Of a DNA stretch of 64,000 nt, positions 3,907-56,675 are shown piece by piece. The DNA is from Mobula hypostoma (taxonomy: Eukaryota). Where the stretch lies: assembly GCF_963921235.1 (NCBI RefSeq), contig NC_086116.1:29016001-29080000 (forward strand). The letters run 5' to 3'. The notes beneath the pieces were generated by a model, which searched no databases, had not been told where the DNA came from, and worked only from the letters and a program-made list of their open reading frames with translations. Position 1 is the stretch's first letter. Each line of letters opens with the position of its first letter. The position numbers and the translations under genes were made by a program.

Positions 3907-5452
3907 CAATACTCTGCAACAGCCTTAGACAATATATACGACCATAAGATATAGGAGGAGAATTAGGCCATTTGACCCATTTCATCGTGACTGATCCAAT
4001 TTTCCTCTCCGCCCCAATCTCCTGCCTTCCCTACCCACACCTCCCATATCCCTTCATGCCCTGACCAATCAATAATATATCAACCTCTGCCTTAAATATA
4101 AATGAAGACTTGGCCCCACAGCTGCCTCGCGGCAATGAATTCCACAGACTCACTACTCTCCAGCTAAAGAAATTCCTCCTCATCTCTGTTTGAAAAGGAC
4201 GGTCCCCTATTCTGAGGCTGTGATCTCTGGTCTTAGACACCCACGCCATAGGAAACGTCTCCTCCACATCCACTCTAGCAAGGCTTTTCACGATTCAATA
4301 GGTTCCAATGAGGTCATCCTTCACTCTTCTGAATTCCAGTGAATGCTGACCCAGAACTATCAAACACTCTTCGTATGACAAGCCATTTTATCGTGGGATT
4401 GTTTTTGTAAACCTCATTTGAACCCTCTCCAGTTTCAGCACATTCTTTCTAAGATAGGGGCCCAAACCTGCTTACGATACTCCAAGTGAGGCCTTACCAG
4501 TGCTTTATTAATCTCAGCATTACATGTTTACTGTTATATTCTAGTCCTCTTGGAATGAATGTTAACATCACATTTACCTTCCTCACCACAGACTCAACCT
4601 GCAAGTTAGCCTTGGGGGAACCCTGCACAAGGTCCTCCAAATACCTTTGCACCTCATTGTTTTGTATTTTCTGTCCATTTGGAAAGTAGTCTATCTTTTT
4701 ATTTTTTCTACCAAAGTGCATGACCATACCCTTACCAGCACTATATTCCATCTGTCATTTCTTTATTAATTTTCCTACTCTGTCTAAGTCCTTTTGTAGC
4801 CTCTCTGCTTCCTTAAAACTGCCTGTCCCTCCATCTATCTTTGTATCATCTGCAAACTTTACAACAAGGCCATCAATTCCACCATCCAAATCATTGACAT
4901 ATAACATAAAAAGAATCAGTCATAACACTGGTCCCTGTGAAACACCACTAGTCACCGGCAACCAATCGGCAAATGTCTCCTTTATTCCCATTCTTAGCTT
5001 CCTTCAATTAGCCACTATATATATAGTTAGTCTGCCTAAGACTTTTGCACAGTACCGTATTAGAGTGGAGAATGAGTGTGAAAATCTGGAGGTCAAAGGA
5101 TATTGGAAATGGTGTGGAGCAGACACACTCAGCCCTGAGACACCAGGCGAGATCATTTTATTTCAAACAATTGGTTTATTGATCATAACAGAATGTCTCT
5201 CTGGTGCTTCCTGCTCCCTCTACTCTCTCTTCCCCTCTTCCCAAACATGATTCCCCTCTCCCTGCCCCCTTCCCATTCTCAGTCCACAATAGAGACTCAT
5301 ATCAGAATCAGGTTTATCATCACTCAAATATGTCATGATTTATTTTTCTTGTGGCATCAGTACATTGCAATACATAAAATTACTACAATACTATGCAAAA
5401 GTCTTGGGCATCCAAGCTATATATATGTGCCTAGGACTTCTGCACAGTACTG
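3907..5452. mobile_element. Composite Tc1-like non-autonomous element (copy 1), left palindromic end split by a CR1 insertion
   Basis: TA-CAATACTCTGCAACAGCCTTAGACA (decayed TIR) at 3907; the other half of the left palindrome resumes at ~5016; right palindrome ends GCACAGTACTG at 5452. Interior matches the copies at 25779, 44205 and 56129. Confidence 0.75.
3939..5015 (-). mobile_element. CR1-clade LINE 3' fragment (decayed RT C-terminus plus 3'UTR)
   Basis: Minus ORFs with VMHFGRKNK, RGLEYNSK, MRRNFFSWRVVSLWNSLP; terminal CTTATGGT-type tail; inserted in a TATATA spacer. Confidence 0.9.
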
Positions 5453-6089
5453 CACTTATCCCATCAGTCATCTCCTTCCCCATCCGTAAAATACCCTTCG
5501 GCTTCCAAATTCACCTTATTAGCCACCTTAGAGCCCACAAAACTGACTGGAAACAAGTTATTCATGGTAGGAGACCAAAGAAGAAGACTAAATTCCTTCA
5601 TGTAAAGCTACTCCTTCAGTTAAGTTATTAACCACATGAAAAAGAAAAAAATATATACCAAAACAAATCCATTTTATAACCAACCATTCACAAGTGTGTC
5701 CGCTTGACACTGTTCAATTTGAAAATCATCCTTTGAATTATGACTCACCATATTAATTTGACAGCCATCTTCCTGCTCCCACAATTCTATGTTTGTATTT
5801 TCCCATTTGATACCACATTCTGAATTTCTATTTTAAATGATAAAAGTCATTGATGAAGCTTAGTTTGGTATGTGGAAAGCACATGATTATTTGAAATTAT
5901 GATGAGATTTACAGTGCTCTGATTCTTCTTCGGTATTTCTTCAGGATTGAGCAGGACATGCTTCATTCTATTTTTGAAAAGTGGATGATTCTAAAATTGC
6001 ATTGTATATTTTGCCATGACTGGCTGATGTGTATTTTAATCTCCAAATTAATGGCATGAATATTGATTTTGCCTTCCAATAAAAAAAAT

Positions 6090-6467
6090 CCTCCCCCTCC
6101 CTCTTCTTATATTCCCCATTCTGTCCTCTCACCTTTTCTCCTCACCTGCCCATCACCTTTCCCTGCTGCCCCTCCTTCTTCCCTTTCTCCTATGGTCTAT
6201 TTTCCTCTCCTATCAGATTCCTTCCTCACCAGCCCTTTACCTTTCCCTCACACCTAGCTTCGCTTATTAACTTCTAACTAGATCTCCTTCACCACCCCCT
6301 CACATTTTTATTCTGGGATCTCCCCCCTTCCTTTCCAATGCTGAAGAAGGGTTTTGGTCTGAAACATTGGCTCTTTTCATTTCCATAGATGCTGTCTGAC
6401 CTGCTGAGTTCCTCCAGCATTTTGTGAGTGTTGCTCTGGATTTCCAGCATCTGCAAAATCTCTTGTT
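6090..6467 (+). mobile_element. Penelope-like pseudo-LTR remnant with decayed hammerhead motif
   Basis: Pyrimidine-rich tract, then CTGAAGAAGGG...GAAACATTG and GATGCTGTCTGACCTGCTGAGTTCCTCCAGC...TTCCAGCATCTGCA, homologous to the termini of the elements at 50993 and 58135. Confidence 0.7.
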
Positions 6468-6669
6468 AATCTCCTTAGCCTGTTCACTTGCACTTTTGTA
6501 AGTCACATCCATAATTATCTGTATTCATTTTCTCCTTTGTGCCATTGTGCTCTATGTGGTTAACTCAAATATTAAACATTAAAATCATTTTCTTCTGTTT
6601 TTTGTTTTTCAGGTATTAAGCATTTCAGGATCTGTTCTCAGACCTAACTGTTTATCTCAGCTGCAATTA

Positions 6670-7060
6670 AGTTCAAAGTACGTTTGTTAATTGTATATTG
6701 TCACTCTGAGATGCATTTTCTTGTCGGCATGCTCAGTTATAGAAACAATGTAAGACTGCTCCAACTTGGACATTCAACCAGTGTGCAAAAGACAACAAAC
6801 TGCTCAAATACAAAATGGGAGTAATAATAATAATAAATAAGCAATAAGTATCAAGATCAAAAGATAAAGAGTCCTTGAAAGTGAGTCCTTAGGTTGTGGG
6901 AACATTTCAGTGATGGGGCAAGTGATGTTGAGTGAAGTTATCTCCTTTGGTTCAAAGGCCTGATGACTGAGGAGTAATAAGTGTTCTTGAACCTCGCCAT
7001 GTGAGTCCTGAGGCTCCTGAGGCTTTTTCCTGATGGCAGCCGCAAGAAGAGAGCATGACC
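6670..7060 (-). mobile_element. Rex1/Babar LINE 3' fragment
   Basis: Matches the 3' ends of the larger copies at 36030 and 61540. Confidence 0.7.
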
Positions 7061-7184
7061 TGTAAATCTCTTCGGCAGTCTCTCTAAGCTCTACAACGGG
7101 ATGACAAGATCTCAATGCAATACTTCAGATCCAACCTAAGTGATTTATAAAGTTGCAAGTAAGCTCAGTTTCTTAACTAAAAAA

Positions 7185-8700
7185 GGCATATATGTCACCA
7201 TACACAACCCTGAGATTCATTTTCTTGTGGGCATACTCAACAAATCTATAGAGTAATAACTGTGGCAGAATTAATTAAAGACTCCCCGACTAGGTCATTC
7301 TGCTAGGGTTCAGAAGACAACAAACTGTGTAAGCACGAAAACAAAGAAATAAGAAGAAGAAATAAATAAGTAATGAATATGAGAAGAAGAATCCTTTAAA
7401 GCAAGTCCATAGGTTGTGGGAACAGTTCAGTGATGGGGCAAGTGAAGCCGAATCAAGTTATCCCCTCTGGTTCAAGAACCTGATGGTTGTGGGGTTATTA
7501 CTGTTTTTGAACCTGGTGGTGTGAAGACTTCTGTGCCTTCTTCCTGATGGCAGCAACCAGCAGAAAGCATGATCTGGAGGTAGTCGGGGTCGCTGATGAT
7601 GTATGCTGCTTTCCTGCAACAATGCTTCGTGTAGATATGCTCAAAAGTGGGTAAGACATTACCCATGATGGACTATGCCATATCCACTGCTTATTGTAAG
7701 ATTTTCCATGAGACCATAAGACATAGGAGCAGAAGTAGGCCATTCAGCCCATCCAGCCTGCTCTGTCCTTCAATCATGAGCTGATCCAATTCTTCCAGTC
7801 ATCACCACTCCCCTGCCTTCTCCCCATACTCTTTGATGCCCTGACCAATTAAGAACCTGTCAGTCTCTGGCTTAAATACACCCAATGACTTGGACGCCAC
7901 AGCCGCTCATGGCAACAAATTCCACAGATTTACCACCCTCTGACTAAAGTAATTTCTCCACATCTCTGTTCTAAATAGATGTCCTTCAATCCTGAAGTCA
8001 TGCCCTCTTGCCTGAAGCTCATCTACCAAGGGAAATAACTTTGCCATATCTAATCTGTTCAGGCCTTTTAACATTCAGAATGTTTCTATGAGATCCACCC
8101 CCCCCCCTCCCTGCCCCATTCTCTTGAACTCCAGGGAATACAGGGAATACAGCCCAGGAGCTGCCAGATGTTCTTCATCTGGTAGATCATTCATTCCTGG
8201 AATCATTCTTGTGAATCTTCTCTGAACCCTCTCCAATGTCAATATATCCTTTCTAAAATAAGGAGCCCAAAACTGCACCCAATACTCCGTATAGTCTCAT
8301 GAGTGCCTTATAGAGCCTCAACAGCACACCCCTGCTCTTATAATCAATTCCTCTGGAAATGAATGGCAACATTGCATTCGACTTCTTCACCACCGGCTCA
8401 ACTTGGAGGTTAACCTTCAGGGTATCCTGCACAAGGACTCCCAAGTTTACATTTTGAATTCTCTCCCCATCTAAATAAGAGTCTGCCCATTTATTGCTTC
8501 CACCAAAGTGCATGACCATACACTTTCCAACGTTGTATTTCATTCAAAGGTATTGGTGTTTCCATACCAGGCTGTGATGCAGCTGCTCGTCAGCACACAC
8601 CTATAGAAGTTTGTCAAAGTTTTAGGTATCATGACGAATCTTTTTAAAATTGCTGACCCTCTCCACCTCTGATCCTTCTGGTTTCCTCCTCCTAAAGTCA
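7185..8700 (-). mobile_element. Rex1/Babar LINE fragment, split by CR1 at ~7706-8540
   Basis: KTLTNFYRCV...CITAWYGN peptide at 8540-8640; the sequence continues across the CR1 insert (TTTCCAT / TTTCATTCAAAGG). Confidence 0.75.
7706..8540 (-). mobile_element. CR1-clade LINE 3' fragment
   Basis: KYNVGKCMVMHFG and QFWAPYFRKDILTLERVQRRFTRMIPG peptides; CTTATGGT tail. Confidence 0.9.
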
Positions 8701-8823
8701 ACATATATTGTGTTACGTACCCCGTAACTGGGTTGCCAAACCAGCAGAAAGGGATCACTCAGTTGGAGTCTGGAGTACTAGAACTAAGAAAGTTTTATTA
8801 AAGAAGCAAGCAACACAGTAATC

Positions 8824-8990
8824 GCCTTAGATACATAGTGCTCTACAATAGCTCTGTGTATCTCCTCTCTCCTCATTGTCGACTTCACCTTAGCAAGATT
8901 CAACTGTTTGGCCACAGCTATCAATTCCGATTTCCTGGCATCCTCTAATGCCTCCAAGGTCGGCGCCTTTATAAATTCCTCAGCCTCCAT
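8824..8990 (-). pseudogene. Truncated gag N-terminus of the LTR element
   Basis: MEAEEFIKAPTLEALEDARKSELIAVAKQLNL... starts ~75 nt downstream of the primer site and is cut by the deletion into the 3' LTR. Resembles fish Gypsy gag N-termini (recalled). Confidence 0.65.
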
Positions 8991-9066
8991 TCCTGCTGTT
9001 TGTCTTTTCTTTCTTTCGGGAATTTTAACCCAATCAATTTACTCCGTCCCAAATTTAGCGTTCAAA

Positions 9067-9085
9067 ATCCCGGACGAGAACCCCA
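9067..9085 (-). promoter_or_regulatory. Primer-binding site complementary to the tRNA-Pro 3' end
   Basis: Minus strand TGGGGTTCTCGTCCGGGAT versus canonical PBS-Pro TGGGGGCTCGTCCGGGAT; 4 nt from the LTR end. Confidence 0.85.
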
Positions 9086-10496: not shown

Positions 10497-13280
10497 AATG
10501 GACAGAAAAAGTCTGCCTTTACAATGAAAGCTACTTATCAATGGATTTTACATGGTCTAGTGATCCAAGTTGTCCCATTCCATTGTGCCTAGTCTGTGGC
10601 AAACAACTTACAAATGCTGCAGTGGCTCCAGCAAAATTGAAAAGACACTTAACTACAAGTCACAGCTGTATGACACATAAAAGTGCTGATTATTTTAAAT
10701 GGCTTTTGGAATCTTAAAACAGAGTAAAGCTTTTGTTAATAAAGTCACAGTCAGTAAAGGGACAGAGAAAGCAAGTTATTTAGTAGCAGAACTTACTACC
10801 TAGAAAAGGAAAAGTCACACAGTTGGTGAGAACCTAATAATGCCAGAATGTAAAATTATAGTGGGTAAAATGCTAGGATAAGATGCTGAATGAGAAATTG
10901 AAATGATTTCATGCTCATTGTTGATTACGGCTGGTTCTTCACTTGCAAAGATCAGGAGAGAAGAAGAGTCCACAGGAGCGACGGCACAATCGTTGGTGAC
11001 TGTAGAGGCCAGTTCTGGATCTGCAGCCCCTGGAGCAGTAGGGACACAGGAACGGCTGGGATGAGGCACTTCCTGCATCTCTTCTTCCCTTGGGCAGAAG
11101 CTCTTCTGGATTCCTCAAAATTCTTGCCTGCTTCATGGATTAGTGTTCTCCAGAGGTCTCCATCACAAGCCAGCTGCTGCCACTCATTGACCTTGATATT
11201 TGCCTGAGAGAACTGCAGTTTAAGTTGACTTTGTACCTCCTGCAGGAATGAGGTGGGTGGGGATCCACGATCACTCTTGCCCTGGGAGAATTCTCCATAG
11301 ACTACTGCTTTCAGTAACCTGGAGTTGTCTATGCAAAACATATGGCCTGGCCAATAAGCTGCCGGAGCAGCAAAGTGGTTTCAATGCTTGGAAGTTGAGC
11401 CTTTTTCAGGACCTCATTGTTGGAGACACGATCCTGCTAGCTGATACCCTTGATAGAGTGGAGGCAGCACAGATGGAAGCACTCGAGCAACTGGATTCGC
11501 TTGCAGTACAAGATCCAGGCTTTGGAGCCTCATAGAAGTGATGATGGCAGCCCTGTACACCTGGATTTTTGTGGACAGATGCAGCTGGTAGTTCTTCCAC
11601 ACACATTTCTGGAGATGCCTGAAGGCATTACTGACTCTGATGAGTAGATTGTCAACATCCCTTACTATTGCTGCCCAAGTAAGTGAACTGCTCAATTGTG
11701 GCAAGAGGGTGGTTGTCCATGGTGATCAGAGATCGGTTATAAACACCATGAGGGGCTTAAAATAGAGGATCATTGTTTTCTTCAGACTGACTGTTAACCC
11801 AAAAGCCCTTGCAGCCTTGTCGAACTGAGTGACTACAGTCTGTAGCACATCCTCTGCGTACATGAGAAGAGCATAGTCGTCTGCATATAGTAGCTCAAGA
11901 ATGGGATCTAATGTTTTTTTTTCGGGCAAGAAGGCGGCCACTCCCAAACAGTATGTTAAGTTGACGTATTGATGACATGTCACATGATGCTGAAGAGGTT
12001 TTGTGTAATAAACTGAAAAACAGCAGCTTCTCTATCTAGGTCGTTGAGTTAATAAATTTCACCAATTAAAGCCATGTTGTAGCATTTGTAAGATTTGTAA
12101 ATGATGGTGAAATTCAAGAAAACTTTTTCTGTTACGAAGAACTGCCCGAAACAAACAAGGGTCAAGATAGGTTTAATATTTTGTCTTCATATCTGGAAAC
12201 AAAATCTCTGTCTTGGAGGAACTGTTTCAGCATCTGTACTGATGGTGCCCCATCAATGATTGGCTTCCTTAAAGGTTTTGTTTCTTTTGTAATAAAGAAA
12301 ATCCTGATGTAATCACAACACACTGCCTTTTTCACAAAGAGGTGCTGATGTCAAAAACTCTTGGAGATGACATGAAAGAGGTTCTGGATGATGCTACAAA
12401 CTGGTTAACTTTATTAAACAAAGACCAGTTCACTCGAGAATGTTTTTAAAACTGTGTGAAAACCTGGACAAAGAACACACCAGTCCGCTGCTACATACAG
12501 ACATCCAGTGGCTTAGCAGAGGAAGAGTTCTCATCAGAGTGTTTGAGATAAAAGTTGAATTGCAGGAGTACTTTCAAGAAAATAGTAGGCCAGATTTTGC
12601 TGACTGTATTGAAGATGAAGAATGGCTGCAGAAATTAGCCTACTTAGCAGACATTTGTCATAATATAAACCAGTTGAACAATTCTCTGCAAGGCCCTGGA
12701 GAAAATGTTTTGACTTCAAGTGACAAAATTCTTGGATTTAAAAGGAAACTGAATCTTTGAAAAAATCATGTTGCAAAAAGAAATCTTTAAATGCTCCCAC
12801 TGCTGCTTGGGTTTAAGAGTGAGGAAGGATCAGAAAGTCTCCACTCTTATTGAAGAACACCAGAACAAAATTGAACAGTATTTTTCCTCCCTTTCAACAC
12901 AACTGTATGATTGGGCAAGGGAACCTTTCTCTGGATCTTCTGCTCAGCCTGAGAACTTGATTTTGAGAGAAGAGGAAGAATTTTGTGAGCTGCAGTCTGA
13001 TTGTTCACTCAAGATGAGATTTACTGACCTGTCTCTGAACAAGATCTGGATTTCTGTGAAAGAAGAGTATCCTGCCATTCATAGGAAAGCAATGAACATG
13101 TTGTTGCAGTTTTCAACTTCTTACATGTGTAAGCAAGCTTTTTCTTGTTTAACAAGTATCAAGGGCAAGGATAGAGATCGTCTCATTTCAGTTGAAGGTG
13201 AAATCTGTGTGTGCTTATCTCAAGTTCAACCCAGAATTAAGTATTTGTGTAGCAAAAAACAAGCAAAGGCTCACATGCTA
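10497..13280 (+). pseudogene. Buster-type hAT transposase pseudogene (ZBED5/ZBED8-like), with stops, frameshifts and an RTE insertion
   Basis: BED finger (PLCLVCGKQL...KLKRHLTTSH), CTDGAPSM, THCLFH, WLSRG, LAYLADI, and FSTSYMCKQAFS dimerisation motif. Confidence 0.9.
10912..11930 (-). mobile_element. RTE-clade LINE, 5'-truncated, nested in the hAT transposase
   Basis: LLYADD RT motif, AFGLTVSLKKT, TKIQVYRA, and C-terminal CPYCSRGCRSRTGLYSHQRLC; the transposase frame resumes at ~11938. Confidence 0.9.
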
Positions 13281-13750
13281 GGCCTATATTTGAGCTTGAT
13301 CATGTCACTCAGAAAGAAAATGTTTTTTCAAAGTCTTGTATAAAATTGTATCTTAAGCTGTATTTTTATTCATATTGCTTTGGCTTATAGCTTTTATTAA
13401 TTTTACTATTCAACATTGTCAATAAATTTTCATGTTGTAAATAGTATTAATTAAAATCAACTTGCAGTTATTTAAATTAAATATACTGAGCCTAGTTTTA
13501 GAAAAATGAAATCCCATTTTGGCTTAAGCCAGTTATTTAACAGAAATTTATTATGTTTGACTTAAGAGTTTTTAAAATTTATGGAAGGGAAAGAAAGAGA
13601 TTAATTTCAAGCATAACTACCTATTCTTTTCAAGAAAGGTTGGCTAAGAATTCATTATCTACTCAAAACAGCATTGACCATTATTTTGGATTATTACATC
13701 TACAATTTATTGATCATGCTAATGTATCATGATGTGTAATTTTTGTTAAT

Positions 13751-13833: not shown

Positions 13834-14119
13834 TCAAAGATTTCTCCAGGGCAAAAAGGTTGAGAAAGGCTGGGATAAGCAATTCAACTGTACATTTAGG
13901 CACATCTTAAATGCTGTCAGCACTCAGCTTCAACAGGACCTGTCCTTCTTCCAATTCAAACACGAGTTTTTGAAGCTGGTTTACCCCAGTCTAACTGCCT
14001 GACATTTCAGTAGACTTAAAGGTGAGAACGTTGGTGAGGGTCAATGCAATAATTCAAAAAAGGGAACGGTACTTGTAAATGAGCAGAATTTGGCTTTTAC
14101 TCTGGCTTTAAAGCAGAGT

Positions 14120-15138
14120 ATCAGAATTAGGTTTATTATCACTGGCAGGTGTTGTGAAATTTGTTAACCAGAAACAGCAGTTCAATGCAATATATGATAA
14201 TATAGAAAGAAAAAAACATAATAAAATAAAATCAATAAGTAAATCAATTACAGTAAGTATATACATGTGTATATTGAATATATTTAAAATAGTGCAAAAA
14301 CAGAAATAATATATGTTACAAAAAAAGTGAATTAGTGTTCATGGGTTCAATGGCCATTTAGGAATCGGATGGTAGAGGGGAAGAAGCTGTTCCTGAATTA
14401 GTGAGTGTGTGCTTTCAGGTTTCTGCACCTCTTTCCTGATGGTAACAATGAGAAGAGAACATGCCTTGGGTGATGGGAGTCCTTAATAATGGACGTTGCC
14501 TTGCTGAGACACTACTCCTTAAAGATGTCCTGGGTATTTTGTAGGCTAGTACCCAAGATGGCGCTGGCTAAATTTACAACCTTCTACGGCATCTTTCAGT
14601 CCTGTGCTGTAGACTCCCCACCCCCCCACCCATACCAGACAGTGATGCAGCCTGTCAGAATGCTCTCCACAGTACATCGAGAGAAGTTTTTGAGTGTTTT
14701 AGTTGACAAATCAAGTCTCTTCAAACTACTAATGAAATATAGCTGCTGTCTTGCCTTCTTAATAGCTGCATCGATATGTTGGGACCAGGTTAGATCCTCA
14801 GAGATCTTGACAACTGGGAACTTGAAATTGCTCACTCTCTCCACTTCTAATCCCTCTATGAGTATTGGTTCGTGTTCCACCATCTTACCCTTCCTGAAGT
14901 CCGCAATCAGCTCTTTCACCTTACCGACATTGAGTGCCAGGTTGTTGCTGCGACATCACTCAACTAGTTGGTATATCTTGCTCCTGTACACCCTCTCATC
15001 TTTATCTGAGATTCTACTAATAATAATTGTATCATCAGCAAATTTATAGATGGTATTTGAGCTATACCTAGCCACACAGTCATAGGTATGGAGCGAGTAG
15101 AGCAGTGGGCTAAGCACACACCCTTGAGGTGTTTCCAG
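14120..15138 (-). mobile_element. Rex1/Babar LINE fragment (RT core to 3' tail)
   Basis: PQGCVLSPLLYSL, YKFADD, KELIADFRK, KKARQQLYF, ESILTGCITVWYG. Confidence 0.9.
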
Positions 15139-15199
15139 CAGAAACACTGTGGAAAAAGAAAATTCAAAGGAAAAACTGATAAAATTTGTTGGAAAAAAA

Positions 15200-24197: not shown

Positions 24198-24199
24198 GT

Positions 24200-24503
24200 A
24201 CTGAGCTAGGGTGCCTAAGACATTTGCACAGTACTGTACTAATTTTGTGAATAGCACTGTACAGCTGCCACAAAAAAGAAAACAAATTTTGGTGACGTGT
24301 GAGTGTTGATAAACCTGATTCTGATTTGGGTCTCTATTCTGGACTGAGATTAGGCGGGAAGAGGGGAATCATGCTTCGGAAAAGGGGAAGGGATAAGGAA
24401 GGAAGCGGGAAGCACCAGAAAGACATTCTGTAATGATCAATAAACCAATCATCTGAAATCAAATGACCTTGCTTTGTGGCTCAGGACTGGGTGTGTCTGC
24501 ACC
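24200..24503. mobile_element. Composite Tc1-like element, partial copy
   Basis: GCTAGGGTGCCTAAGACATTTGCACAGTACTG followed by the shared interior. Confidence 0.75.
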
Positions 24504-24577
24504 ACAAGAGCAACAAATTTCACAACATATACCGGTGATATTAAACCTGATTCTGAAGCTGATAAAGGATTTTGTAA

Positions 24578-24860
24578 AATTCCTTGAGATGCAGCAAGGA
24601 GTAGGCCTTTTTGGCCCTTCGAGCCGCACTGGCCAGCAACCCCGATTTAATCCTAGCCTAATCAAGGGACAATATACAATGACCATTTAACCTACCAACC
24701 AGTACATCTTTGGACTGTGGGAGGAAACCAGAGAACCCAGAGGAAACCTACACAGTCAGGGGAAGAACGTACAAACTCCTGACTGGCAGTGGCCGGAACT
24801 GAACCCGGATCACTGGTACTGTGAAGTACCGTGCTAACCACTATGCTACCGTTCCGCCCC
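24578..24860 (-). mobile_element. HE1-like V-SINE
   Basis: Reverse complement of the SINE at 27181; A/B boxes at the right end. Confidence 0.8.
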
Positions 24861-25778: not shown

Positions 25779-26303
25779 CAATGCTGTACAAAAATATGTA
25801 CCATATACATATAGCTATATCTCTAAGGTGACTAAGACCTTTGCACAGTGCTGTAGTAACTTTATGCATTGCACTATACTGCTGCCACACATATTATAAA
25901 CCTGATTCTCATGTGGAACTCTATGGTGGACTGAAAGTGGGAAGGAAGCAGGGACAGGGGACTCGTGGTTGGAAAAGGGGGGAAAGAAAGGGGACGGAGC
26001 AGGAAGCACCAGAAAGACATTCTGTAATGATCAATAAAGCAATTGTTTGGAATCGAATGACCTTACCTGGTGTCTCAGGGCTGGGTGTGTCTGTACCCAT
26101 GCCACTCTCTGCACCTGGCACACTTTCTCTGCCACCTGTCCCACACCCCTCCCAGGGCATACCACCCTCTCCATTCCCAACATCCTTTGCTCCCGCCAAA
26201 TTTACAAACTCACTCTACGCTCCATGTTGACAAATACAGTACTGTGCCAAAGTCTTACACAACCCAGCTAAGTATATGTGCCTAAGTCTTCTGCACAGTT
26301 CTG
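25779..26303. mobile_element. Composite Tc1-like element (copy 3)
   Basis: TA flanks; palindromic double-TIR units at both ends. Confidence 0.8.
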
Positions 26304-27749: not shown

Positions 27750-28542
27750 TGGATAAGGCAGCATCTATTATTAAGGACCCCCTTCACCCAGAACATGCCC
27801 ACTTCTCAGGAATGAGGAACAGAAGCATGAAGGCACACACACAATGATTCAGGAACAGCTTCTTCCCCTCTGCCATCTAATCTCTGAATGGACATTGAAC
27901 CCATTAGTAGAGCTACTAGGACTTAATGTTTCAATCCCTATGGTAAGTTGGCAGTCTCGATGTTGGCAGTGGGCTTGGAATGGTGACAAGGAGGGAGGGT
28001 AGGTACGTCATCGGGGTCATCGGGTGGGCACCCTCCTTCTTTGACGTTTCGTTGATAAGCCCACGACGTCTCCAGAGGGCTCAACGGTGCTACCTGGCAT
28101 CCCAGATACACCCCCCTCAGTTCTATACCCTCCTGTCTTCATCTTGCAGCCCAGTTGTTGTCTTTCCTTTTAATCCAAATCCAGTTGCTGCTTTCTTCTG
28201 CTGCGTTTGACAAGGACTTGATTGCTTGTTGGAGGGAGTGACCCCTCACCCCCATCTTCTTCAATAGACCGGTCATAGATGTAGCAACGAATCCCCTGCG
28301 TCCCACTTCTACAGGGAAAATCTTGGTCTTCCAGCCATGAGCATTACATCATACTTATTTTTTACTTATTTTTCTCTTTTTTGAACTACTTATTTAATTT
28401 AACTTAATTTATATATATATATATATATATATACACTTCTGTAATTTACAGTTTTTATTATTATGTATTGCTATGTACTGCTGATGCATAACAACAAATT
28501 TCATGACATACGCCAGTAATATTAAACCTGATTCTCATTCTG
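27750..28542 (+). mobile_element. Rex1/Babar 3' fragment split by a HERO insertion; contains (AT)n at ~28410-28433
   Basis: TTCAGGAACAGCTTCTTCCCCTC, GGACATTGAACCCAT|...|CCATGAGCA, and tail AAACCTGATTCT. Confidence 0.75.
27905..28334 (-). mobile_element. HERO-clade (RLE-type) non-LTR retrotransposon 3' fragment
   Basis: Manual translation of 28333-28139: WKTKIFPVEVGRRGFVATSMTGLLKKMGVRGHSLQQAIKSLSNAAEESSNWIWIKRKDNNWAAR*, matching the recalled HERO C-terminus (PVEVGxRGF...SxWxWxKR). CCAT lies on both sides. Confidence 0.8.
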
Positions 28543-28792
28543 AAGTACCTGCTTAAAGCAATGGGATCCACATTCCTTTCGGATTTCAGGTTTCAGTCAT
28601 ATGATCAAGGCATGATTACTCTAATTGTGATGTTAACTAGATAGGTTGAGCGGAAATCTAGGAGAAAACAATAGAGAAGAAACAAAGGGACTCTGATAGT
28701 CATATGTAGGACAGATTTGTTCTCAGTTCCCTTATGTACATGGATCTACAGGGTTGACTTTCACTGGATCCCATAAGCAAAGTTTCCTGAGG

Positions 28793-31261: not shown

Positions 31262-31338
31262 CAGTACTGTACAAAGGTTTAGGCACATATACGGTATCAA
31301 ACAATATGTACAGTAGTTAAGACTTTTGCATAGTTCTG
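31262..31338. mobile_element. Solo 77-bp palindromic Tc1 MITE (MADE-like), same TIR as the composite element
   Basis: TA-CAGTACTGTACAAAGGTTTAGGCAC...TAAGACTTTTGCATAGTTCTG-TA. Confidence 0.8.
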
Positions 31339-38584: not shown

Positions 38585-39117
38585 TTGGACACTCGCAAAT
38601 TTCTGCAGGTGTACAGTGGAGAGCATTCTAACCGGCTGAATCACTGTCTGCTATGGGGGGGGGGGTTGCTCTGCACAGGATTGAGATAAGCTGCTGAGAG
38701 TTGTAAAGTTAGTCAGCTCCATCATTGACACTAGCCTCTGTAGTATCCAGGAAATTTTCAAGGAGTGATGCCTCAAAAAGGCACATACATTGTTAGGGAC
38801 GTCCATCACACGGGTCATGCCTTGTTCTCATTTCCACCATTAGGAAGGAGGTACAGAAGCCTGAAGGCACACACTCAATGACTCAGGAACAGCTTCAGCC
38901 CCTCTACCATCATTGTCTGAATGGATATTGAACCCATGAACATTAAATCTATTTTTTTGATTTCTATTTTTGCACTAATTATTTAATTTAATTATTCAAT
39001 GTATATACTTAGTTTAATTCACATTTTTCCAATTGTCATGTATTGCATTGTACTACTCCTGCAAAGTCAACAAATTTCACAACATATGCTGGTGATTTTA
39101 AAACTGATTCTGATTCT
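38585..39117 (+). mobile_element. Rex1/Babar LINE 3' fragment
   Basis: ACACTCGCAAATTTCTGCAGGTGTACAGTGGAGAGCATTCT (TLANFCRCTVESIL); tail CTGATTCTGATTCTG. Confidence 0.85.
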
Positions 39118-39239
39118 GTTCATTTGTGAAGATGCTTTACCGAGCTCAAAAAGTGTTCGAAAAATGTAGTGTTTTGTACAGTAGGAGAATGTGTCTACTG
39201 CACTGATAAAGTAAACACTTCTCCATTTCAGTTTAGAAA

Positions 39240-40789: not shown

Positions 40790-41422
40790 CCGTCAGTGGC
40801 TACTTTATTATGTACTGGAGGTACTTAATGGAATGGTCACTGATTGTATTCTCATCATCTTCTGGCACAGTTGCCTCTCCACTTTGATGTGTTGTACATT
40901 CAGAAATGCTCTTCAGCCCACCACTGTTGTTATGCATGGTTATTTGAGTTACCGTCACCTTCCTGTCAGCTTGAACCAGTCTGGCCATTCTCCACCGGCC
41001 TCTCTCATTAACAAGGCATTTTTGCCCACAGATCTACCACTTACTGGATTTTTTTTAATATATTGCACCATTCTCAGTAAACTTGAGATCAGTGGTTCCC
41101 AACCTGGGACCCAAGGACGTCTCTCAGTTACTGTAGGGGTCCATGGCATTAAAAAGTTTGGAAACTCCTGCACACTACTGTTGTGCATGAAAATTCCAAG
41201 CAATCAGCAGTTTCTGAGAAACTCAGAACACCCCATCTGGCACCAACCATCATTCCACAGTCTAAGTTACTTAGATCACATCTCTTCCCCTTCTGATGTT
41301 TGATCTGAACAACAACTGAACCTACTGAACATTTCTGCATGCTCTTAAGCATTGAGTGGCTGATTTGATATTTGCATTAATGAGCAGTTTACAGGTATTG
41401 TTAATTAAGTGGCCACTGAGTG
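40790..41422 (-). mobile_element. Non-autonomous Tc1 element with transposase N-terminal remnants
   Basis: TA flanks; TIR related to CACTCAGTGGCCACTTTATTAGGTAC; KRCDLSNLDCGMMVGAR and MARLVQADRKVTVTQIT peptides. Confidence 0.85.
41090..41170. mobile_element. 81-bp hAT-type MITE nested in Tc1
   Basis: CAGTGGTTCCCAACCT...AGTTTGGAAACTCCTG; absent from the copy at 54710. Confidence 0.7.
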
Positions 41423-44204: not shown

Positions 44205-44661
44205 GAGTACTGTGCAAAAATCCTGGGCACATATATATAGCTAGGGTGTCTCAGACGTTAGCACAGTAGTGCATTTGTCAATATGGAGTAGAGACCGAGC
44301 TTGTAATCTGGCAGGAGCAAAGGATGTTGGGAATGACAGTGGTGGAGCGCCGCAGGAGGGGTGTGGGGCAGGTGGCAGAAAAGGTGTGCCAGGGGTGGGG
44401 GAGGCATGGCTGCAGAGACACCTTGCTCTCTGAGACATCAGACAAAATCACTTGATTCCAGACAATTGGTTTATTGATCATTACAGAATGCCTCTCTGGT
44501 GCTTCCTGCTCCCTTCATATTTTCCCGCCCAATTGCTCCCATCCCACTCTAGTCCACAGCAGAGACCCTTATCAGTATCAGGTTTGTCATCACTCACATA
44601 TGTCATGGAATTTGTTTTTTTTTTGGGAGTAGTACTGTGCAAATGCCTTAGGTATCATAGC

Positions 44662-44719
<58 letters not shown>

Positions 44720-44739
44720 AAGACTTTTGCACAGTACTG
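44205..44739. mobile_element. Composite Tc1-like element (copy 4); right spacer expanded to (AT)n(GT)n
   Basis: Palindromic double-TIR ends; (GT)n at ~44678-44717. Confidence 0.85.
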
Positions 44740-46891: not shown

Positions 46892-47240
46892 CCATAAGAC
46901 CATAAGACAAAGGAGCAGAATTAGATCATTTGACCCATCAGGTCTGCTCTGCCATTTCATCATGGCTGATCTATTTCCCTCTCAGCCCCAGTCTCCAGCC
47001 TTCTCCCCTGAGCCCTTCATACCCTGAATAATCAAGAATCTATCAATTTCTGCCTTAAATATATCCAATAACCTGGCCTCTACAGCCGTCTGTGGCAACA
47101 AATTCCATAGATTCGCCAGTCTCTGGCTAAGGAAATTCTTCCTAAACTCTGCTCTAAATGGACATCCTTCTATTCTGAGGCTGTGTCCTCTGGTCTTAGA
47201 CTCCCCCACCATAGGAAACATCCTCTCCACATCCACTCTA
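46892..47240 (-). mobile_element. CR1 3' fragment, followed by a decayed minus-strand V-SINE to ~47480
   Basis: RVDVERMFPMVGESKTRGHSLRI...NLWNLLP. Confidence 0.85.
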
Positions 47241-50800: not shown

Positions 50801-50966
50801 TATTCGTATTTGCACAGTATATTGTCTTCTGCAATATCTTTCATTGATCCTGTTATAATTACTATTCTATAGATTTGTTGAGTATGCCCACAAGAAAATG
50901 AATCTCAGGGTTGTATCTGCTGACATATCTGGTGACTTTGATAATAACACGTACTTTCAACTTTAA
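47889..50966 (+). mobile_element. Rex1 3' fragment (47889-48108 and 50761-50966) split by a long CR1
   Basis: The 3'UTR is continuous across the CR1 (CACTTT | ATCTCATGTTCTC). Confidence 0.7.
48109..50760 (-). mobile_element. CR1-clade LINE, 2.65 kb decayed ORF2 (endonuclease end, RT) plus 3'UTR
   Basis: IKENPKAF, KSPGQDGMYPRLL, GFVKGRSCLTSLIEFF, DFSKTFD, PQGSVLGPLLF, LVRPNLEYCAQFWSP; frameshifted; 27-bp tandem duplication at 49950-50008. Confidence 0.95.
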
Positions 50967-50992
50967 ACTGTAAAAAAGAGATTTCTACTCAA

Positions 50993-53456
50993 ATAAACAC
51001 GAGGAATTCTTCAGATACTGGAATTTCAAGCAACACACATCAAAGTTGCTGGTGAACGCAGCAGGTCAGGCAGCGTCTCTAGGAACAGGTACAGTCGACG
51101 TTTCAGGCCGAGAACCTTCGTCAGGACTAACTGAAGAAAGAGCTAGTAAGAGATTTAAAAGTGGGAGGGGGAGGGGGAGATCCAAAATGATAGGAGAAAA
51201 CAGGAGGGGGAGGGATGGAGCCAAGAGCTGGACAGGTGATTGGCAAAAGGGATATGAGAGGATCATGGGACAGGAAGTCCAGGGAGAAGGAAAAGGGGGA
51301 GGGGGGAAAAACCCAGAGGATGGGCAAGGGGAATAGTGAAGGGGACAGATGGAGAGAAAGGAGAGTGAGAGAAAGAATGTGTTTATTAAATAACGGATGG
51401 GGTACGAGAGGGAGGTGGGGCATTAGCGGAAGTTAGAGAAGTCAATGTTCATGCCATCAGGTTGGAGGCTACCCAGACGAATATAAGGTGTTGTACCTCC
51501 AACCTGAGTGTGGCTTCATCTTTACAGTAGAGGAGGCCGTGGATGGACATGTCAGAATGGGAATGGGATGTGGAATTAAAATGTGTAGCCACTGGGAGAT
51601 CCTGCTTTCTCTGGCGGACAGAGCGTAGGTGTTCAGCAAAATGATCTCCCAGTCTGCGTCGGGTCTCGCCAATATATAGAAGGCCACATCGGGAGAACCG
51701 GACGCAGTATATCACCCCAGCCGACTCACAGGTGAAGTGTCGCCTCACCTGGAAGGGCTGTCTGGGGCCCTGAATGGTGGTAAGGGAGGAAATGTAAGGG
51801 CAGGTATAGCACTTGTTCTGCTTACAAGGATAAGTGCCAGGAAGAAGATCAGTGGGGAGGGATGGGGGGGACGAATGAACAAGGGAATCGCGTAGGAAGC
51901 GATCCTTGCGGAAAGCGGGGGGGGGAGGGAAAGATGTGTTGTTTTGAAAGATGTTTTGTTGGCTTTGTGGAACAATCTATGTTCTGTACCTATTCTGGTA
52001 TCTGTCCCCCACTTTTCCTTCGCTACATCGACGACTGCATTGGCGCTGCTTCCTGCACACATGCTGAGCTCGTTGAATTTATTAACTTTACCTCCAACTT
52101 TAACCCTGCTCTCAAGTTTACCTGGTCCATTTCCGACACCTCCCTCCCCTTTCTAGATCTTTCTGTCTCTGTCTCTGGAGACAGCTTATCTACTGATGTC
52201 TACTATAAGCCTACTGACTCTCACAGCTATCTGGACTATTCCTCTTCTCACCCTGTCTCTTGCAAAAATGCCATCCCCTTCTCGCAATTCCTCCGTCTCT
52301 GCCGCATCTGCTCTCAGGATGAGGTTTTTCATTCCAGGACGAGGGACATGTCCTCCTTTTTTAAAGAAAGGGGCTTCCCTTCCTCCACCATCAACTCTGC
52401 TCTCAAACACATCTTCCCCATTTCACCACATCTGCTCTCACTCCATCCTCCCACCACCCCACTAGGAATAGGGTTCCCCTGGTCCTCACCTACCACCCCA
52501 CCAGCCTCCGGTTCCAACATATAATTCTCCGTAACTTCCGCCACCTCCAACGGGATCCCACCACTAAGCACATATTTCCCTCCCCTCCTTTCTCTGCTTT
52601 CCGCAAGGATCGCTCCCTACGCGACTCCCCTGTCCATTCGTCCCCCCCATCCCTCCCCACTGATCTCCCTCCTGGCACTTATCCTTGTAAGCGGAACAAG
52701 TGCTACACATGCCCTTACACTTCCTCCCCTACCACCATTCAGGGCCCCAGACAGTCCTTCCAGGTGAGGCGACACTTCACCTGTGAGTCGGCTGGGGTGA
52801 TATACTGCATCCGGTTCTCCCGATGTGGCCTTCTATATATTGGCGAGACCCAACGCAGAGTGGGAGATCATTTTGCTGAACACCTACGCTCTGTCCGCCA
52901 GAGAAAGCAGGATCTCCCAGTGGCCACACATTTTAATTCCACATCCCATTCCCATTCTGACATGTCTATCTACAGCCTCCCCTACTGTAAAGATGAAGCC
53001 ACACTCAGGTTGGAGGAACAACACCTTATATTCCGTCTGGGTAGCCTCCAACTTGATGGCATGGACATTGACTTCTCTAACTTCCACTAATGCCGCACCA
53101 CCCCCTCGTACCCCATCTGTTACTTATTTTTATACACACATTCTTTCTCTCACTCTCCATTTTTTCCCTCTGTCCCTCTGACTATACCCTTTGCCCATCC
53201 TCTGGGTTCCCCCCCCCCACTTTCCTTCTCGCTGGGCCTCCTGTCCCATGATCTTCTCATACCTATTTTGCAAATCACCTGTCCAACTCTTGGCTCCATC
53301 CCTCCCCCTCCTGTCTTCTCCTATCATTTTGGATCTCCCCCTCCCCCTCCCACTTTTAAATCTCTTACTAGGTCTTTCTTCAGTTAGTCCTGACGAAGGG
53401 TCCCGGCCTAGAGATGCTGCCTGATCTGTCGCGTTCACCAGCAACTTTGATGTGTG
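50993..53456. mobile_element. Penelope-like element, inverted pair (minus copy 50993-~51938, plus copy ~51953-53456)
   Basis: RYIDD RT motif, LPFLDL, DVYYKPT; GIY-YIG GVIYC...LYIGET in both arms; 11-bp TSD TTTCTACTCAA at 50982-50992 and 53457-53467. Confidence 0.95.
51092..51133 (-). ncRNA. Minimal type I hammerhead ribozyme motif, core intact
   Basis: AGUC-CUGACGA-AGGUUCUCGGCCU-GAAAC-GUC-GACU. Confidence 0.75.
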
Positions 53457-54354
53457 TTTCTACTCAAGTTCATCACAAGTGCCTCAGTATTTAGCAGCCA
53501 AAAAAGGGTATTTCGTTTCTCAAAGTACTTTGTGACTGGTTTCTTGCACCATTTTTGCAGGTTAGATTAACCTCTGTCTCAGTAAGCAATTCCTAATCAG
53601 ATAACAAAGAAGTTCCCTACCTTCACCTTCTATTTCCCTATCCTCTGTGATACTTGTCTGTGTATTAATTAACTTGACCTTGTACATTTCCTGGAAATGT
53701 AAACTGAAAGCTGTAAATGAGAGTGTAGCTCTTTTGGTCTCAAAGGAGAATACAAATAGAACAAATAATAAAGTGAATCAAAGGCAAAAGTCTGGTGCAG
53801 AAAGAAAAAATTGCAAATATTTGAAGCTTGAAATATAACTGGCAAGCCAATAACTATGTGTGCCTCTTGATTCCAATATATGGAAAGAATACTAAACCAT
53901 GTTGTATTTCTATGGCTGTCTCTGATGATCTGTTTAAGGGCTACTTACTGAACAGTGCATCAGATTAATTTTGATGTATGTACCAGTGCTGCCAGCAAAG
54001 CAGAGTCTTACTGAGAAAGTCATGAAGAGATGATAGGTGTGTTACTTCCACATGCAATCAAATTAATTATTGTTTCAGGAGTGTGTCCAATGCACCTGGT
54101 TCTTTTGGCTATGTGCTGGCTATGGCACTTCTAGCTTAAAATGAGCATGAGCTTCTTCTCTCCTACTCTGGAGTTTTAGGTATTCATCAACACTGTTCAA
54201 ATGAGCAAAAAGCCTTCAAGTGTTCAGCCAATTTTCACACCAGGCTTTGGTTTTGTGTTTTTTTTTGTTGTAGCAACATTTGTAATCTAAATGGAGAGAT
54301 ACTGAAGGTGCTACTTTCCTGTTAGTACAATCCAAGAATTTCTAGGTTACCAAT

Positions 54355-54650
54355 TTCAATGGTTCAATTTAATCAGTGAATGTATACAGTACACAACCTG
54401 ACATCCACGAAAACAGGAAAAAAAAACCCTAAGAATGAATGACAGAAAACGTTAGAACTCCAAAACCTCCCTCCCCCACACAAAAGCATCAACCACCCCG
54501 TATTTGTTCCAGCAAAAGCACCCCCCCCCAACACCCACCAGGCAAGCAATAGCAAAGCCCCCAAAGAGACCGTGATCTAGAGTCCATCAATAACTGCTGT
54601 CCATCCCAACACTTCAACATCTCTATCAGGCTGTATCTCTCACTAGTGAG
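54355..54650 (-). mobile_element. LINE-tail element fragment
   Basis: Same tail as at 41585. Confidence 0.55.
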
Positions 54651-54709
54651 CACATAGGATCTGAACAATCATAAATTTAGCTTCTGTTGGGATATTGTGA
54701 TGAAACCTA

Positions 54710-55262
54710 CTGTACCTAATAAAGTGACCACTGAGTGTATGTTAGTGGTCTTCTGCTGATGTAGCCCAGCCACTCCAAAGTTTGACATTTTGTGCATTCT
54801 TGATGCTCTTCTGCACACCACTGTTGTAACATATGATTATTTGACTTACTGTCACCTTCCTCTCAGCTTAAACCAGTGTGGCTAAAATCAGCTTAAAACA
54901 GTCTCCTCTGATGTCTCTCAATAACAAGGTGTTTTCGCCCACACAACTGCTAGTCACTTGATGAGTTTTTTTTTGTTTGTTTTTCACATTATTCTCTGCA
55001 AACTCTAGAAACTGCTTTGTGTGAAAATCCCAATTTTTGAGATACCCAAACCACCCCATCTGGTACCAAAAATCATTCCACAGTCAGAGTTACTTAGATC
55101 ACATTTCTTCCCAATTCTTACGTTTGATCTAAACAACAACAAACCTCTTGACCATGTCTGCATGCTTTTATGCATTGAGTTGCCTCTACATGATTGGCTA
55201 AATAGATATTCACGTTAATTAGCAGGTGTACAGGTGTATTTAATAAAGTAGCTACTAAGTGT
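54710..55262 (-). mobile_element. Non-autonomous Tc1 element, same family as 40790-41422
   Basis: Collinear interior; two same-direction AATAAAGTGRCYACTRAGTG TIR copies at ~54718 and ~55241. Confidence 0.8.
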
Positions 55263-55469
55263 GCCAAATAATTAAATTATCATCTCTGTTTTTATGCTGG
55301 ACTGCCTAGTGTGGTTAAGTATGAGAAATTAGTAAAGAAAACTTTTGACTTGGAAAATTAAAATTAATGCCAATGAAGGAGTAACCACAAAGGGGAGCAG
55401 AGTGTGTGGGGTACAGTTTGAATCATAACAAATAAATTTTAACTTTAAAATTTAATTCCTGTAAGAAAT

Positions 55470-55672
55470 TTTCCCCATTGGAATGTGTGAGTTTTCCCCA
55501 AGTCCTGTGGTTTCCTCCCACAATACAAAGACCAAAGTTAATTGGTCACTTTTAATTGTCCCTTGATTTGGTTTAGGTTACTCGGTGATACGTCAGGGGT
55601 CGCTGGGGTAGCGGAGACTGAAGGACGGGAAGGCCCTACTCTGCACTGCATCACTAAATAAATAAATAAATA
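55470..55672 (+). mobile_element. V-SINE, 5'-truncated
   Basis: GGTTTCCTCCCACA V-domain and (AAAT)n tail. Confidence 0.7.
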
Positions 55673-56128
55673 ACTCGGGAGTAATATTCTATCATATGTT
55701 TAAAGCTTTGGGGAAGAAAAGGTTTTGCAATACTGTTCATTTGGCTGGGTTTTCATATACAGCACAAAATCATGCCACTTAGCTTGACTGGTGTTCATGA
55801 TCCATGTGAAAGAAAAAAACATATTAATGACAAAAACTCCTATGTTAAATAAGAGAGAAGAATGAGGAGTCAAAAAGGAGGTTAAAAGGAAATGTAAGTT
55901 AGGCCATGACTTCTCAGTTATTAATTTTGCTCGACTATTTTTGTTCGCTCTTACACCAGTTTCTCTATAATGAGCCAATTAACCTGGAGTCATTGACATG
56001 GAGTCATTCAGCACTGAAGTAGGCCCCCTGATCTACCAGCTTACGACACGTGTTATAATTCCCACATTCTTATCACCCCTCACCCCTCAGATACCATCGC
56101 TCAACCCCTAGATACCTCCACTCACCTA

Positions 56129-56675
56129 CAGTACCGTGTAAAATTCTTAGGCGCATATATATATACTGTAGCTAGGGTCCCTAAAATTTTTGCACAATAC
56201 TGTAGCAGTTTTAATGTACTGCACTGTACTGCTGCAAAAAAAAACATATTATAATATATGTGAGTAATGATAAACCTGATTCTGATATGGATCTTTATTG
56301 TGAACTGAGAGTGGGAAGGGGTCAGGGAAAAGGGAATCATGGTTGGGAAAAGGGGAAGGGAGAGGGGTGAGAGCAGGAAGGACCAGAGACAAATTCTGTA
56401 ATGATCAATAACCTAATTGTTTGGAATAAAATGAGCTTACCTGGTGTCTCAGGGCTGGGAGAGTCTGCACCTGCAGCACCCCTTGCCTCTGACGTTCCTT
56501 CTCTACCACCTATCACACCCCCTCTCACTTGCTCTACTCTTGCCATTCCCAACATCCTTTGCTCCTGCCAAGATTACAAACTCATTCTCCTTTCCACGTC
56601 AACAAGTACAGTACTATGCAAATGTCTTAGGCATCCTAGCTATATATATGTGCCTAAGACTTTTGCGTAGTATTG
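56129..56675. mobile_element. Composite Tc1-like element (copy 5), inserted in a minus-strand V-SINE (~55995-56870)
   Basis: Clean TA duplication at 56127-56128 and 56676-56677; the SINE continues across it. Confidence 0.9.

What the first reader, a model, noticed from the sequence alone, without database searches (positions are those of the whole stretch)
3907..56675. Composite Tc1 element whose ends are palindromic mini-transposons and whose cargo includes a LINE tail
Seen: five copies (3907-5452, 24200-24503 partial, 25779-26303, 44205-44739, 56129-56675). Each end is a ~67-bp unit, CAGTACTGTGCAAAAGTCTTAGGCAC-(AT)nAGCTAGGG-TGCCTAAGACTTTTGCACAGTACTG, so a full copy has four TIRs, and the two units are inverted relative to each other. 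A similar unit occurs alone at 31262-31338 with TA flanks. The ~400-bp interior contains GTACTGCTGC...TGATAAACCTGATTCTGAT, matching the Rex1 3' tails at ~28470-28542 and ~39045-39117. The 56129 copy has a clean TA duplication inside a SINE, so the whole unit moved together. Known: MADE1-type palindromic MITEs and bacterial composite transposons. Inference: MITE-like ends captured genomic DNA and amplified it as a eukaryotic composite (Pack-like) transposon.
Basis: partly seen in the sequence, partly recalled or inferred. Interest (0 to 1): 0.7.

Follow-up and report, generated by a model that had tools for sequence, protein, structure and literature searches.

The report
Ray Tc1 element with hairpin ends
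This is an old, very abundant, roughly 540-base dead "jumping gene" of rays whose two ends are each a complete 67-base miniature Tc1 transposon, with about 400 bases of non-coding host DNA (including the tail of a LINE) between them; it is a real structural curiosity, not a new kind of system.

Summary
Four full copies, one truncated copy and one related solo unit are at the stated places. The 26-base arm occurs 17 times (up to 7 mismatches) against 0 in shuffles.

- **Ends:** each end is a 67-bp arm-loop-arm palindrome. The two units are reverse complements (65/67) and each has TA on both its outer and inner side. The inverted symmetry stops exactly at unit plus TA.
- **LINE tail:** the match is significant. 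Consensus positions 71-153 hit four independent LINE 3' tails in the window (E down to 3e-11), and the homology starts at the inner TA of the left unit.
- **Autonomous relative (new here):** a 1588-bp Tc1 recovered from metagenome contigs has an intact transposase. It shares 25 of the arm's 26 terminal bases, has plain ~207-bp inverted repeats with no hairpin end, and shares nothing else with the ray element.
- **Abundance and age:** about 24,000 contig pieces per run match it in two species. One insertion is shared at the same locus by both species.

The composite origin, two mini-MITEs bracketing host DNA, is the simplest reading but is not proven. No exact solo unit lies in this window, and the ray's own autonomous parent could not be fetched. 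"Pack-like" gene capture is not supported. The scan had already followed up this family on other DNA of the same genome (s1-143292).

The parts
56129..56675 (+). Full copy (547 bp). Left unit 56129-56202 (loop 7 bp longer), inner TA 56203-56204, LINE-tail-like segment about 56206-56286, remaining interior to 56606, inner TA 56607-56608, right unit 56609-56675. TA/TA outside.
   Evidence: 86% identical to the family consensus. Both junctions are present in organism B contigs (records 17 and 24).
25779..26303 (+). Full copy (525 bp), TA/TA outside. The left outer arm is badly decayed (16/26) and part of the LINE-tail segment is deleted.
24200..24503 (+). Truncated copy. Only the first 8 nt of the left outer arm remain, joined to the loop. 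The element breaks off at 24503, where an unrelated LINE tail fragment (24502-24556) begins.
44205..44739 (-). Full copy in reverse orientation. The loop of the unit at 44630-44739 has expanded into an (AT)n(GT)n microsatellite.
3907..5452 (-). Full copy in reverse orientation, of the short subtype lacking about 80 bp. It is split by about 1.07 kb of foreign repeat DNA (about 3936-5007) inserted in the AT loop of one unit.
31262..31338 (.). Solo 77-bp palindromic Tc1-type mini-element with TA/TA flanks. Its arms are related (about 5 mismatches each), but the loop is different and longer.
39031..39120 (+). LINE 3' tail ending in (GATTCT)n, homologous to consensus positions 72-152 of the element.
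   Evidence: 76% over 84 bp, E 3e-11
28463..28545 (+). LINE 3' tail, homologous to the same segment of the element.
14119..14202 (-). LINE 3' tail on the minus strand, homologous to consensus positions 71-153.
   Evidence: 71% over 85 bp, E 2.5e-7. The ORF on its upstream side (14599-14955, minus strand) has the ALKBH8_N-type match seen in a second ORF here; I read that match as LINE-derived.
24502..24556 (+). Short LINE tail fragment abutting the truncated copy.
   Evidence: 76% over 55 bp, E 1.3e-5

Best explanation
This is an ancient, very high-copy, non-autonomous Tc1/mariner element of rays. Consensus length is about 537 bp, with a shorter subtype lacking about 80 bp.

Structure: each terminus is a 67-bp palindromic mini-element. 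It consists of two 26-bp Tc1 ends facing each other across a 15-bp loop, (AT)nAGCTAGGG.

Movement (inferred): the whole element moved by cut-and-paste into TA sites using the two outermost ends. The enzyme was probably a Tc1 transposase of the family represented by the autonomous element in L003/L006, whose terminal bases match 25 of the 26 in the arm.

Origin (inferred, most likely): two copies of one mini-MITE, possibly a local hop of a single copy, came to lie about 400 bp apart in opposite orientation. One landed at a TA inside the 3' untranslated tail of a LINE, about 82 bp from its end. The other landed about 315 bp downstream in the LINE's flanking DNA. That four-ended unit then became the master copy that amplified.

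Shown: the anatomy, the TA flanks, the LINE-tail homology, the abundance, the shared orthologous insertion, and the plain-ended autonomous relative. Inferred: the order of events and which transposase acted.
For: - The family is real and old. Five copies are 71-80% identical pairwise.
- The arm is far above chance.
- The units are exact inverted copies of each other including the loop (65/67). Each has TA on both sides, and the symmetry drops to 23% (random) immediately beyond unit plus TA. This is what two complete insertions, each with its own TA duplication, would leave.
- LINE homology (four tails, E 3e-11 to 1e-5) begins at consensus positions 71-72, two to three bases inside the inner TA (68-69) of the left unit. 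It ends at the LINE's GATTCTGAT terminus and is followed by unrelated DNA. This is the layout of a LINE end plus its downstream flank.
- The autonomous relative L003 is 1588 bp with about 207-bp near-perfect inverted repeats and an intact 341-aa transposase carrying HTH_Tnp_Tc3_2 and DDE_3. It has one copy of the 26-mer per end and matches the window only over TA plus the arm.
- Interior ORFs have no Pfam match.
- About 24,000 contig pieces per run lie on the element in two species. Hundreds of loose ends run from ...CAGTACTG+TA into non-consensus AT-rich DNA. The 56129 insertion is present at the same locus in organism B.
Against: - No solo copy of the exact 67-bp unit lies in this 64-kb window. 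The one solo (31262-31338) has another loop. Independent mobility of the unit, and its existence before the composite, are therefore not shown.
- TA next to the inner arms is weak evidence on its own: about 1/16 by chance for one side, and the other side could follow from a duplication.
- The autonomous relative is from metagenome contigs of unknown host. The ray's own parent might have different ends.
- The displayed loose-end counts at the right unit (about 1000 on the outer side, about 420 on the inner side) fit most units sitting inside elements. That makes two independent hits by a rare mini-MITE less likely unless local hopping is invoked.
Confidence: 0.6

Rival explanations
1. This is an ordinary MITE with a complex 67-69-bp terminal inverted repeat, not formed by two mini-MITE insertions. 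One end acquired a snap-back (foldback) duplication of TA plus arm during repair or replication. The whole unit was then copied in inverted form to the other end. Solo units are secondary products, made when the transposase uses the outer and inner arms of one end.
For: - All units in the window except the odd solo sit inside elements.
- The two units are identical in consensus, loop included, as an end-to-end copy would be.
- The loose-end ratio is compatible with few solos.
Against: - It needs two special rearrangements, where the composite model needs two ordinary insertions of a known kind of element (MADE1-like palindromic MITE).
- The inner TA and the exact stop of symmetry at unit plus TA come for free under the insertion model.
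- A TA-flanked solo palindromic relative does exist.
Confidence: 0.22
2. This is an internal-deletion derivative of a ray autonomous Tc1. The parent already has hairpin double ends, and the 400-bp interior, including the LINE-like stretch, is leftover parent sequence.
For:
- Most MITEs arise by internal deletion (established knowledge).
Against: - The only autonomous relative with this terminus has plain ends and shares nothing with the interior.
- tblastn of its transposase finds nothing in the window.
- The interior has no protein-family match.
- The LINE homology runs to the LINE's own terminus and then stops, as for a retroposon insertion in host DNA.
Confidence: 0.08
3. The double ends are functionally selected. 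Two transposase-binding sites per end (four per element) mimic the four-site IR/DR layout of Sleeping Beauty-type Tc1 elements. Under this view the four-ended unit, not the two-site solo, was the form that amplified. This is compatible with either origin.
For: - The autonomous relative has about 207-bp inverted repeats, the size class of IR/DR Tc1 elements.
- The composite form predominates in the window.
- The arms are about as well kept as the interior.
Against: - No significant inner repeat of the terminal 26-mer was found in L003's inverted repeat: local score 16, reached by 142 of 500 shuffles.
- The inner arm is inverted relative to the outer arm, not direct as in IR/DR.
- There are no functional data.
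Confidence: 0.1

Closest known systems
MADE1 (human Hsmar1-derived palindromic MITE; see PMC1784062)
   Same: The 67-bp terminal unit has the same layout. Two transposase-binding terminal repeats of a Tc1/mariner element face each other across a very short loop, flanked by TA, with no coding capacity.
   Different: MADE1 occurs as solo units. Here the units are found mainly as an inverted pair bracketing about 400 bp that travels with them. The arm belongs to a Tc1 family, not a mariner family.
Tc7 of Caenorhabditis elegans (from my own knowledge: a non-autonomous element whose terminal about 38 bp equal Tc1 ends and whose remainder is unrelated, mobilised by Tc1 transposase)
   Same: Only the extreme termini match the autonomous element. 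The rest is unrelated DNA, and mobilisation is in trans.
   Different: As I recall it, Tc7 has long simple inverted repeats, not a self-contained palindromic mini-element at each end.
Bacterial composite transposons (Tn5, Tn10) and Drosophila foldback-flanked giant transposons (from my own knowledge)
   Same: Two complete mobile units in inverted orientation bracket cargo, and the outermost ends are used to move the whole.
   Different: The units here encode nothing and depend on a transposase in trans. The cargo is short non-coding DNA. Only one cargo was verified by me.
Autonomous Tc1 in loci L003/L006 (metagenome contigs SXGU01492673.1 and SXGS01206486.1)
   Same: Terminal TA plus 25 of 26 bases are identical to the ray arm. 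It is Tc1-type, with CAGT ends and TA targets.
   Different: It is 1588 bp with about 207-bp plain inverted repeats and an intact transposase, no hairpin end, and no similarity to the ray interior. Its host is unknown.
Pack-type (transduplicating) DNA transposons such as Pack-MULE and Pack-CACTA
   Same: A non-autonomous DNA transposon carries host-derived DNA between its ends.
   Different: No gene or exon fragment is detectable in the cargo. The capture here is by bracketing, not by the gap-repair acquisition proposed for Pack elements.

Membership tests
Tc1/mariner non-autonomous element (MITE) | TA target-site duplication at the outer ends | tested here: met
   TA/TA at three insertions, one side mutated (TA/CA) at a fourth, and the left junction blurred at the fifth. 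Genome-wide loose ends read ...CAGTACTG+TA and then non-consensus DNA.
Tc1/mariner non-autonomous element (MITE) | Terminal inverted repeats matching those of an autonomous Tc1 with a DDE transposase | tested here: met
   The arm matches the terminus of L003/L006 at 25 of 26 bases. The L003 protein has HTH_Tnp_Tc3_2 (7e-17) and DDE_3 (5e-15). The host of L003 is unknown and is not shown to be a ray.
Tc1/mariner non-autonomous element (MITE) | Small size, no coding capacity, high copy number | tested here: met
   525-547 bp. No Pfam hit in interior ORFs. Five copies in 64 kb. About 24,000 matching contig pieces per run.
Composite transposon (two complete mobile units bracketing cargo) | Each terminal unit has both of its own ends and its own target duplication | tested here: met
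   Arm-loop-arm with TA on both sides of both units. Symmetry ends at unit plus TA.
Composite transposon (two complete mobile units bracketing cargo) | The same unit also exists and moves on its own | tested here: inconclusive
   Only a related 77-bp solo with a different loop is in the window. No exact solo was found. A genome-wide census was not possible.
Composite transposon (two complete mobile units bracketing cargo) | The same units bracket different cargo at other places | not tested
   Other first-reader notes of this scan claim composites of 1.1 to 5.4 kb (s1-143436, s1-143626). I could not read those windows.
Pack-type transduplicating transposon | Cargo contains fragments of host genes | tested here: not met
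   No Pfam family in nine ORFs from the interiors of four copies. The only identifiable cargo is a LINE 3' tail.
IR/DR-type Tc1 (Sleeping Beauty-like) | Two direct copies of the transposase-binding site within each long inverted repeat | tested here: not met
   In the ray element the two sites per end are inverted, not direct. In L003 no significant inner repeat was found.

The most novel reading that the evidence does not exclude
The 67-bp palindromic mini-MITE is a general 'handle' in ray genomes. Pairs of it repeatedly bracket and mobilise different host segments, making a true eukaryotic composite-transposon system. The 540-bp family won the amplification race because two binding sites per end favour synapsis by its Tc1 transposase.
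Probability: 0.2. Interest if true: 0.65.

Novelty: new variant of a known kind. Interest (0 to 1): 0.4.

Why it matters
If the composite origin holds, this is a clear, high-copy eukaryotic case of host DNA mobilised by bracketing between two miniature transposons. That route of sequence capture is textbook in bacteria and, to my knowledge, rarely documented for Tc1/mariner in vertebrates.

It also offers a natural substrate for asking how a Tc1 transposase chooses among four available ends. For annotation, recognising the family, probably tens of thousands of copies, explains many short hairpins and (AT)n/(GT)n microsatellite seeds in ray genomes.

It does not reveal a new mechanism, and no host function is indicated.

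Tried and rejected
- **Ray autonomous parent:** The parent's ends in the ray therefore remain unseen.
- **Viral-contig scans:** scans for the arm, the loop plus arm, and a conserved interior stretch found nothing.
- **Literature:** no paper holds 16-mers of the arm. Searches for elasmobranch Tc1 MITEs and for eukaryotic composite or foldback Tc1 elements gave nothing specific.
- **Rfam:** no family reached gathering score in the window.
- **Empty-site paralogues:** no repeat copy in the window spans any of the five insertion sites.
- **Tc1-like ORFs at 40.8-41.4 kb (minus strand):** they look by eye like a Tc1 transposase remnant but have no Pfam hit. No arm lies nearby, and tblastn with the L003 transposase finds nothing there. 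I rejected them as the parent.
- **Inner direct repeat in L003:** not significant.
- **Depth as copy number:** the tool warns against this. The decayed left unit of the 56129 copy attracts about 100 times less depth than the right unit, which shows how strongly depth depends on divergence. I therefore rejected the idea that the interior is a more abundant family of its own. Interior matches in the window occur only inside the five copies, and no well-supported loose end shows another context.
- **Large protein searches:** not run, because they return no organism and so could not locate a ray copy.
Full report
**Observation**

Reading the six stated places and aligning them confirms one repeat family.
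- Full copies lie at 56129-56675 (+), 25779-26303 (+), 44205-44739 (-) and 3907-5452 (-). A truncated copy lies at 24200-24503 (+).
- The 26-base arm CAGTACTGTGCAAAAGTCTTAGGCAC has 7 hits at up to 3 mismatches, with none expected. It has 17 hits at up to 7 mismatches, against 0 in 20 shuffles.
- The copies are 71-80% identical to one another and 81-93% identical to a five-copy consensus of 537 bp. The family is therefore old.

**Anatomy**

- Each end of the consensus is a 67-bp unit: arm, a 15-bp loop (AT)nAGCTAGGG, then the reverse-complement arm.
- The left unit equals the reverse complement of the right unit at 65 of 67 positions. At one of the two differing positions (56634), the majority letter of matching contigs is the symmetric one (table 3).
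- Directly inside each unit lies TA, as it does outside. Beyond unit plus TA the two sides are only 23% alike, which is random.
- The better-kept units fold as DNA hairpins (for example 56609-56675, -17.8 kcal/mol, z -7.4). Decayed units do not. I saw no compensating changes between the arms, so they decayed independently.
- Outer flanks are TA/TA for three insertions, with one side mutated (TA/CA) at 3907-5452 and the left junction of 44205-44739 blurred.
- The 3907-5452 copy is long only because about 1.07 kb of another repeat sits in the AT loop of one unit.
- In the 44205-44739 copy one loop has grown into an (AT)n(GT)n microsatellite.
- Copies fall into a long subtype and a short subtype that differ by about 80 bp of C-rich sequence. 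Contig joints that skip 56459 to 56539-56544 show the same split genome-wide.

**The LINE tail**

The family consensus matches four independent LINE 3' tails in the window over consensus positions 71-153:

| Window position | Match | E-value |
|---|---|---|
| 39031-39114 | 76% over 84 bp | 3e-11 |
| 28413-28538 | partly the AT loop | 9e-14 |
| 14119-14202 (-) | 71% over 85 bp | 2.5e-7 |
| 24502-24556 | 76% over 55 bp | 1.3e-5 |

- The consensus matches better than single copies did, as expected for true homology.
- The homology begins two to three bases inside the inner TA of the left unit. It runs to the LINE's own terminus (AAACCTGATTCTGAT; in the LINE copies this continues as GATTCT repeats) and then stops.
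- The next roughly 315 bp match nothing else in the window and no protein family.
- The cargo therefore looks like the last 82 bp of a LINE, or of a SINE with that tail, plus the DNA that lay downstream of it.
- I did not test whether the LINE is Rex1.

**The transposase family**

- A scan of metagenome contigs for the arm returned six loci, all from one Tc1 family.
- L003 and L006 hold complete 1588-bp elements with near-perfect inverted repeats of about 207 bp.
- They encode an intact 341-residue protein with the HTH_Tnp_Tc3_2 and DDE_3 domains.
- The terminal bases match the ray arm at 25 of 26 positions.
- Each end carries a single copy of the 26-mer, so there is no hairpin end.
- Against the window, only TA plus the arm match. 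The transposase finds nothing by tblastn.
The LINE-tail one did not occur. On the parent, nothing here shows double ends or a parent-derived interior.

**Abundance and age**

- Contigs of four public runs from two organisms were laid on 55980-56830 at 80% likeness.
- Between 13,000 and 24,000 contig pieces per run matched the element, while the flanks were single-copy.
- Hundreds of contigs end the match at ...CAGTACTG+TA and continue into AT-rich, non-consensus DNA. This confirms the outer boundary and the TA target genome-wide.
- Contigs of organism B span both junctions of the 56129 insertion with 2-5 differences (records 17 and 24). That insertion therefore predates the split of the two species.
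- The tool warns that summed depth is not copy number, so I make no quantitative claim from depth. The displayed loose ends (about 1000 on the outer side and about 420 on the inner side of the right unit) fit most units lying inside elements, but that list is incomplete.

**Interpretation**

- **Secure:** this is a high-copy, ancient, non-autonomous Tc1 element that transposed as a whole.
- **Likely, not proven:** two copies of a MADE1-like palindromic mini-MITE bracketed about 400 bp of host DNA, and the four-ended unit became the amplifying master.
- **For this reading:** the inner TAs, the exact end of the symmetry, the LINE-end-plus-flank layout of the cargo, and the plain-ended autonomous relative.
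- **Against it:** no exact solo unit is in the window. The one solo (31262-31338) is 77 bp with a different loop.
- **Main rival:** a rearrangement origin of a complex terminal repeat, with solos as by-products.
- **'Pack-like' gene capture:** not supported.

**Relation to earlier work of this scan**

The same family was already followed up on another piece of this genome (s1-143292), with the verdict of a real but modest curiosity of unproven origin. My results agree with that. They add the autonomous relative, the statistics and boundary of the LINE tail, and the shared orthologous insertion. Several other first-reader notes (s1-143436, s1-143626, s1-144819, s1-145004) describe similar units, some with larger cargo. 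I could not check them.

**Limits**

The 140 N in the window were left untouched.

Noticed in passing
window 3936-5007: About 1.07 kb of another interspersed repeat is inserted in the AT loop of one terminal unit. Its minus-strand ORFs (4034-4294, 4497-4754) read by eye like the C-terminal part of a LINE reverse transcriptase, but Pfam gave no hit.
   Followed up: partly
window 44656-44713: The (AT)n loop of a terminal unit has expanded into a compound (AT)n(GT)n microsatellite. The unit loops may seed microsatellites genome-wide.
   Followed up: no
window 40800-41380 (minus strand): Three short ORFs read by eye like pieces of a Tc1 transposase N-terminus of another subfamily. They have no Pfam hit, no arm nearby, and no match to the L003 transposase.
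   Followed up: partly
window 12070-13340 (plus strand): Three consecutive ORFs (80, 122 and 196 aa) read by eye like a decayed hAT-type transposase or a domesticated relative. Pfam found nothing.
   Followed up: partly
L003 92-1679 and L006 90-1677: These are apparently active Tc1 copies: an intact 341-aa transposase and about 207-bp near-perfect inverted repeats. The right repeat overlaps the end of the coding sequence. The contigs are filed as metagenomes and the host is unknown. L001, L002 and L005 hold decayed or partial copies of the same family.
   Followed up: partly
window 56129-56675 versus family majority (table 1): Where this copy differs from the majority of matching contigs, the window mostly has A where others have G (19 places) and T where others have C (21 places). 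That is G>A and C>T decay of this copy, the usual deamination pattern.
   Followed up: no
window 24590-24860 and 56676-56860: Two copies of a tRNA-derived SINE-like repeat in reverse orientation. The 56129 element sits at a TA of one of them.
   Followed up: partly
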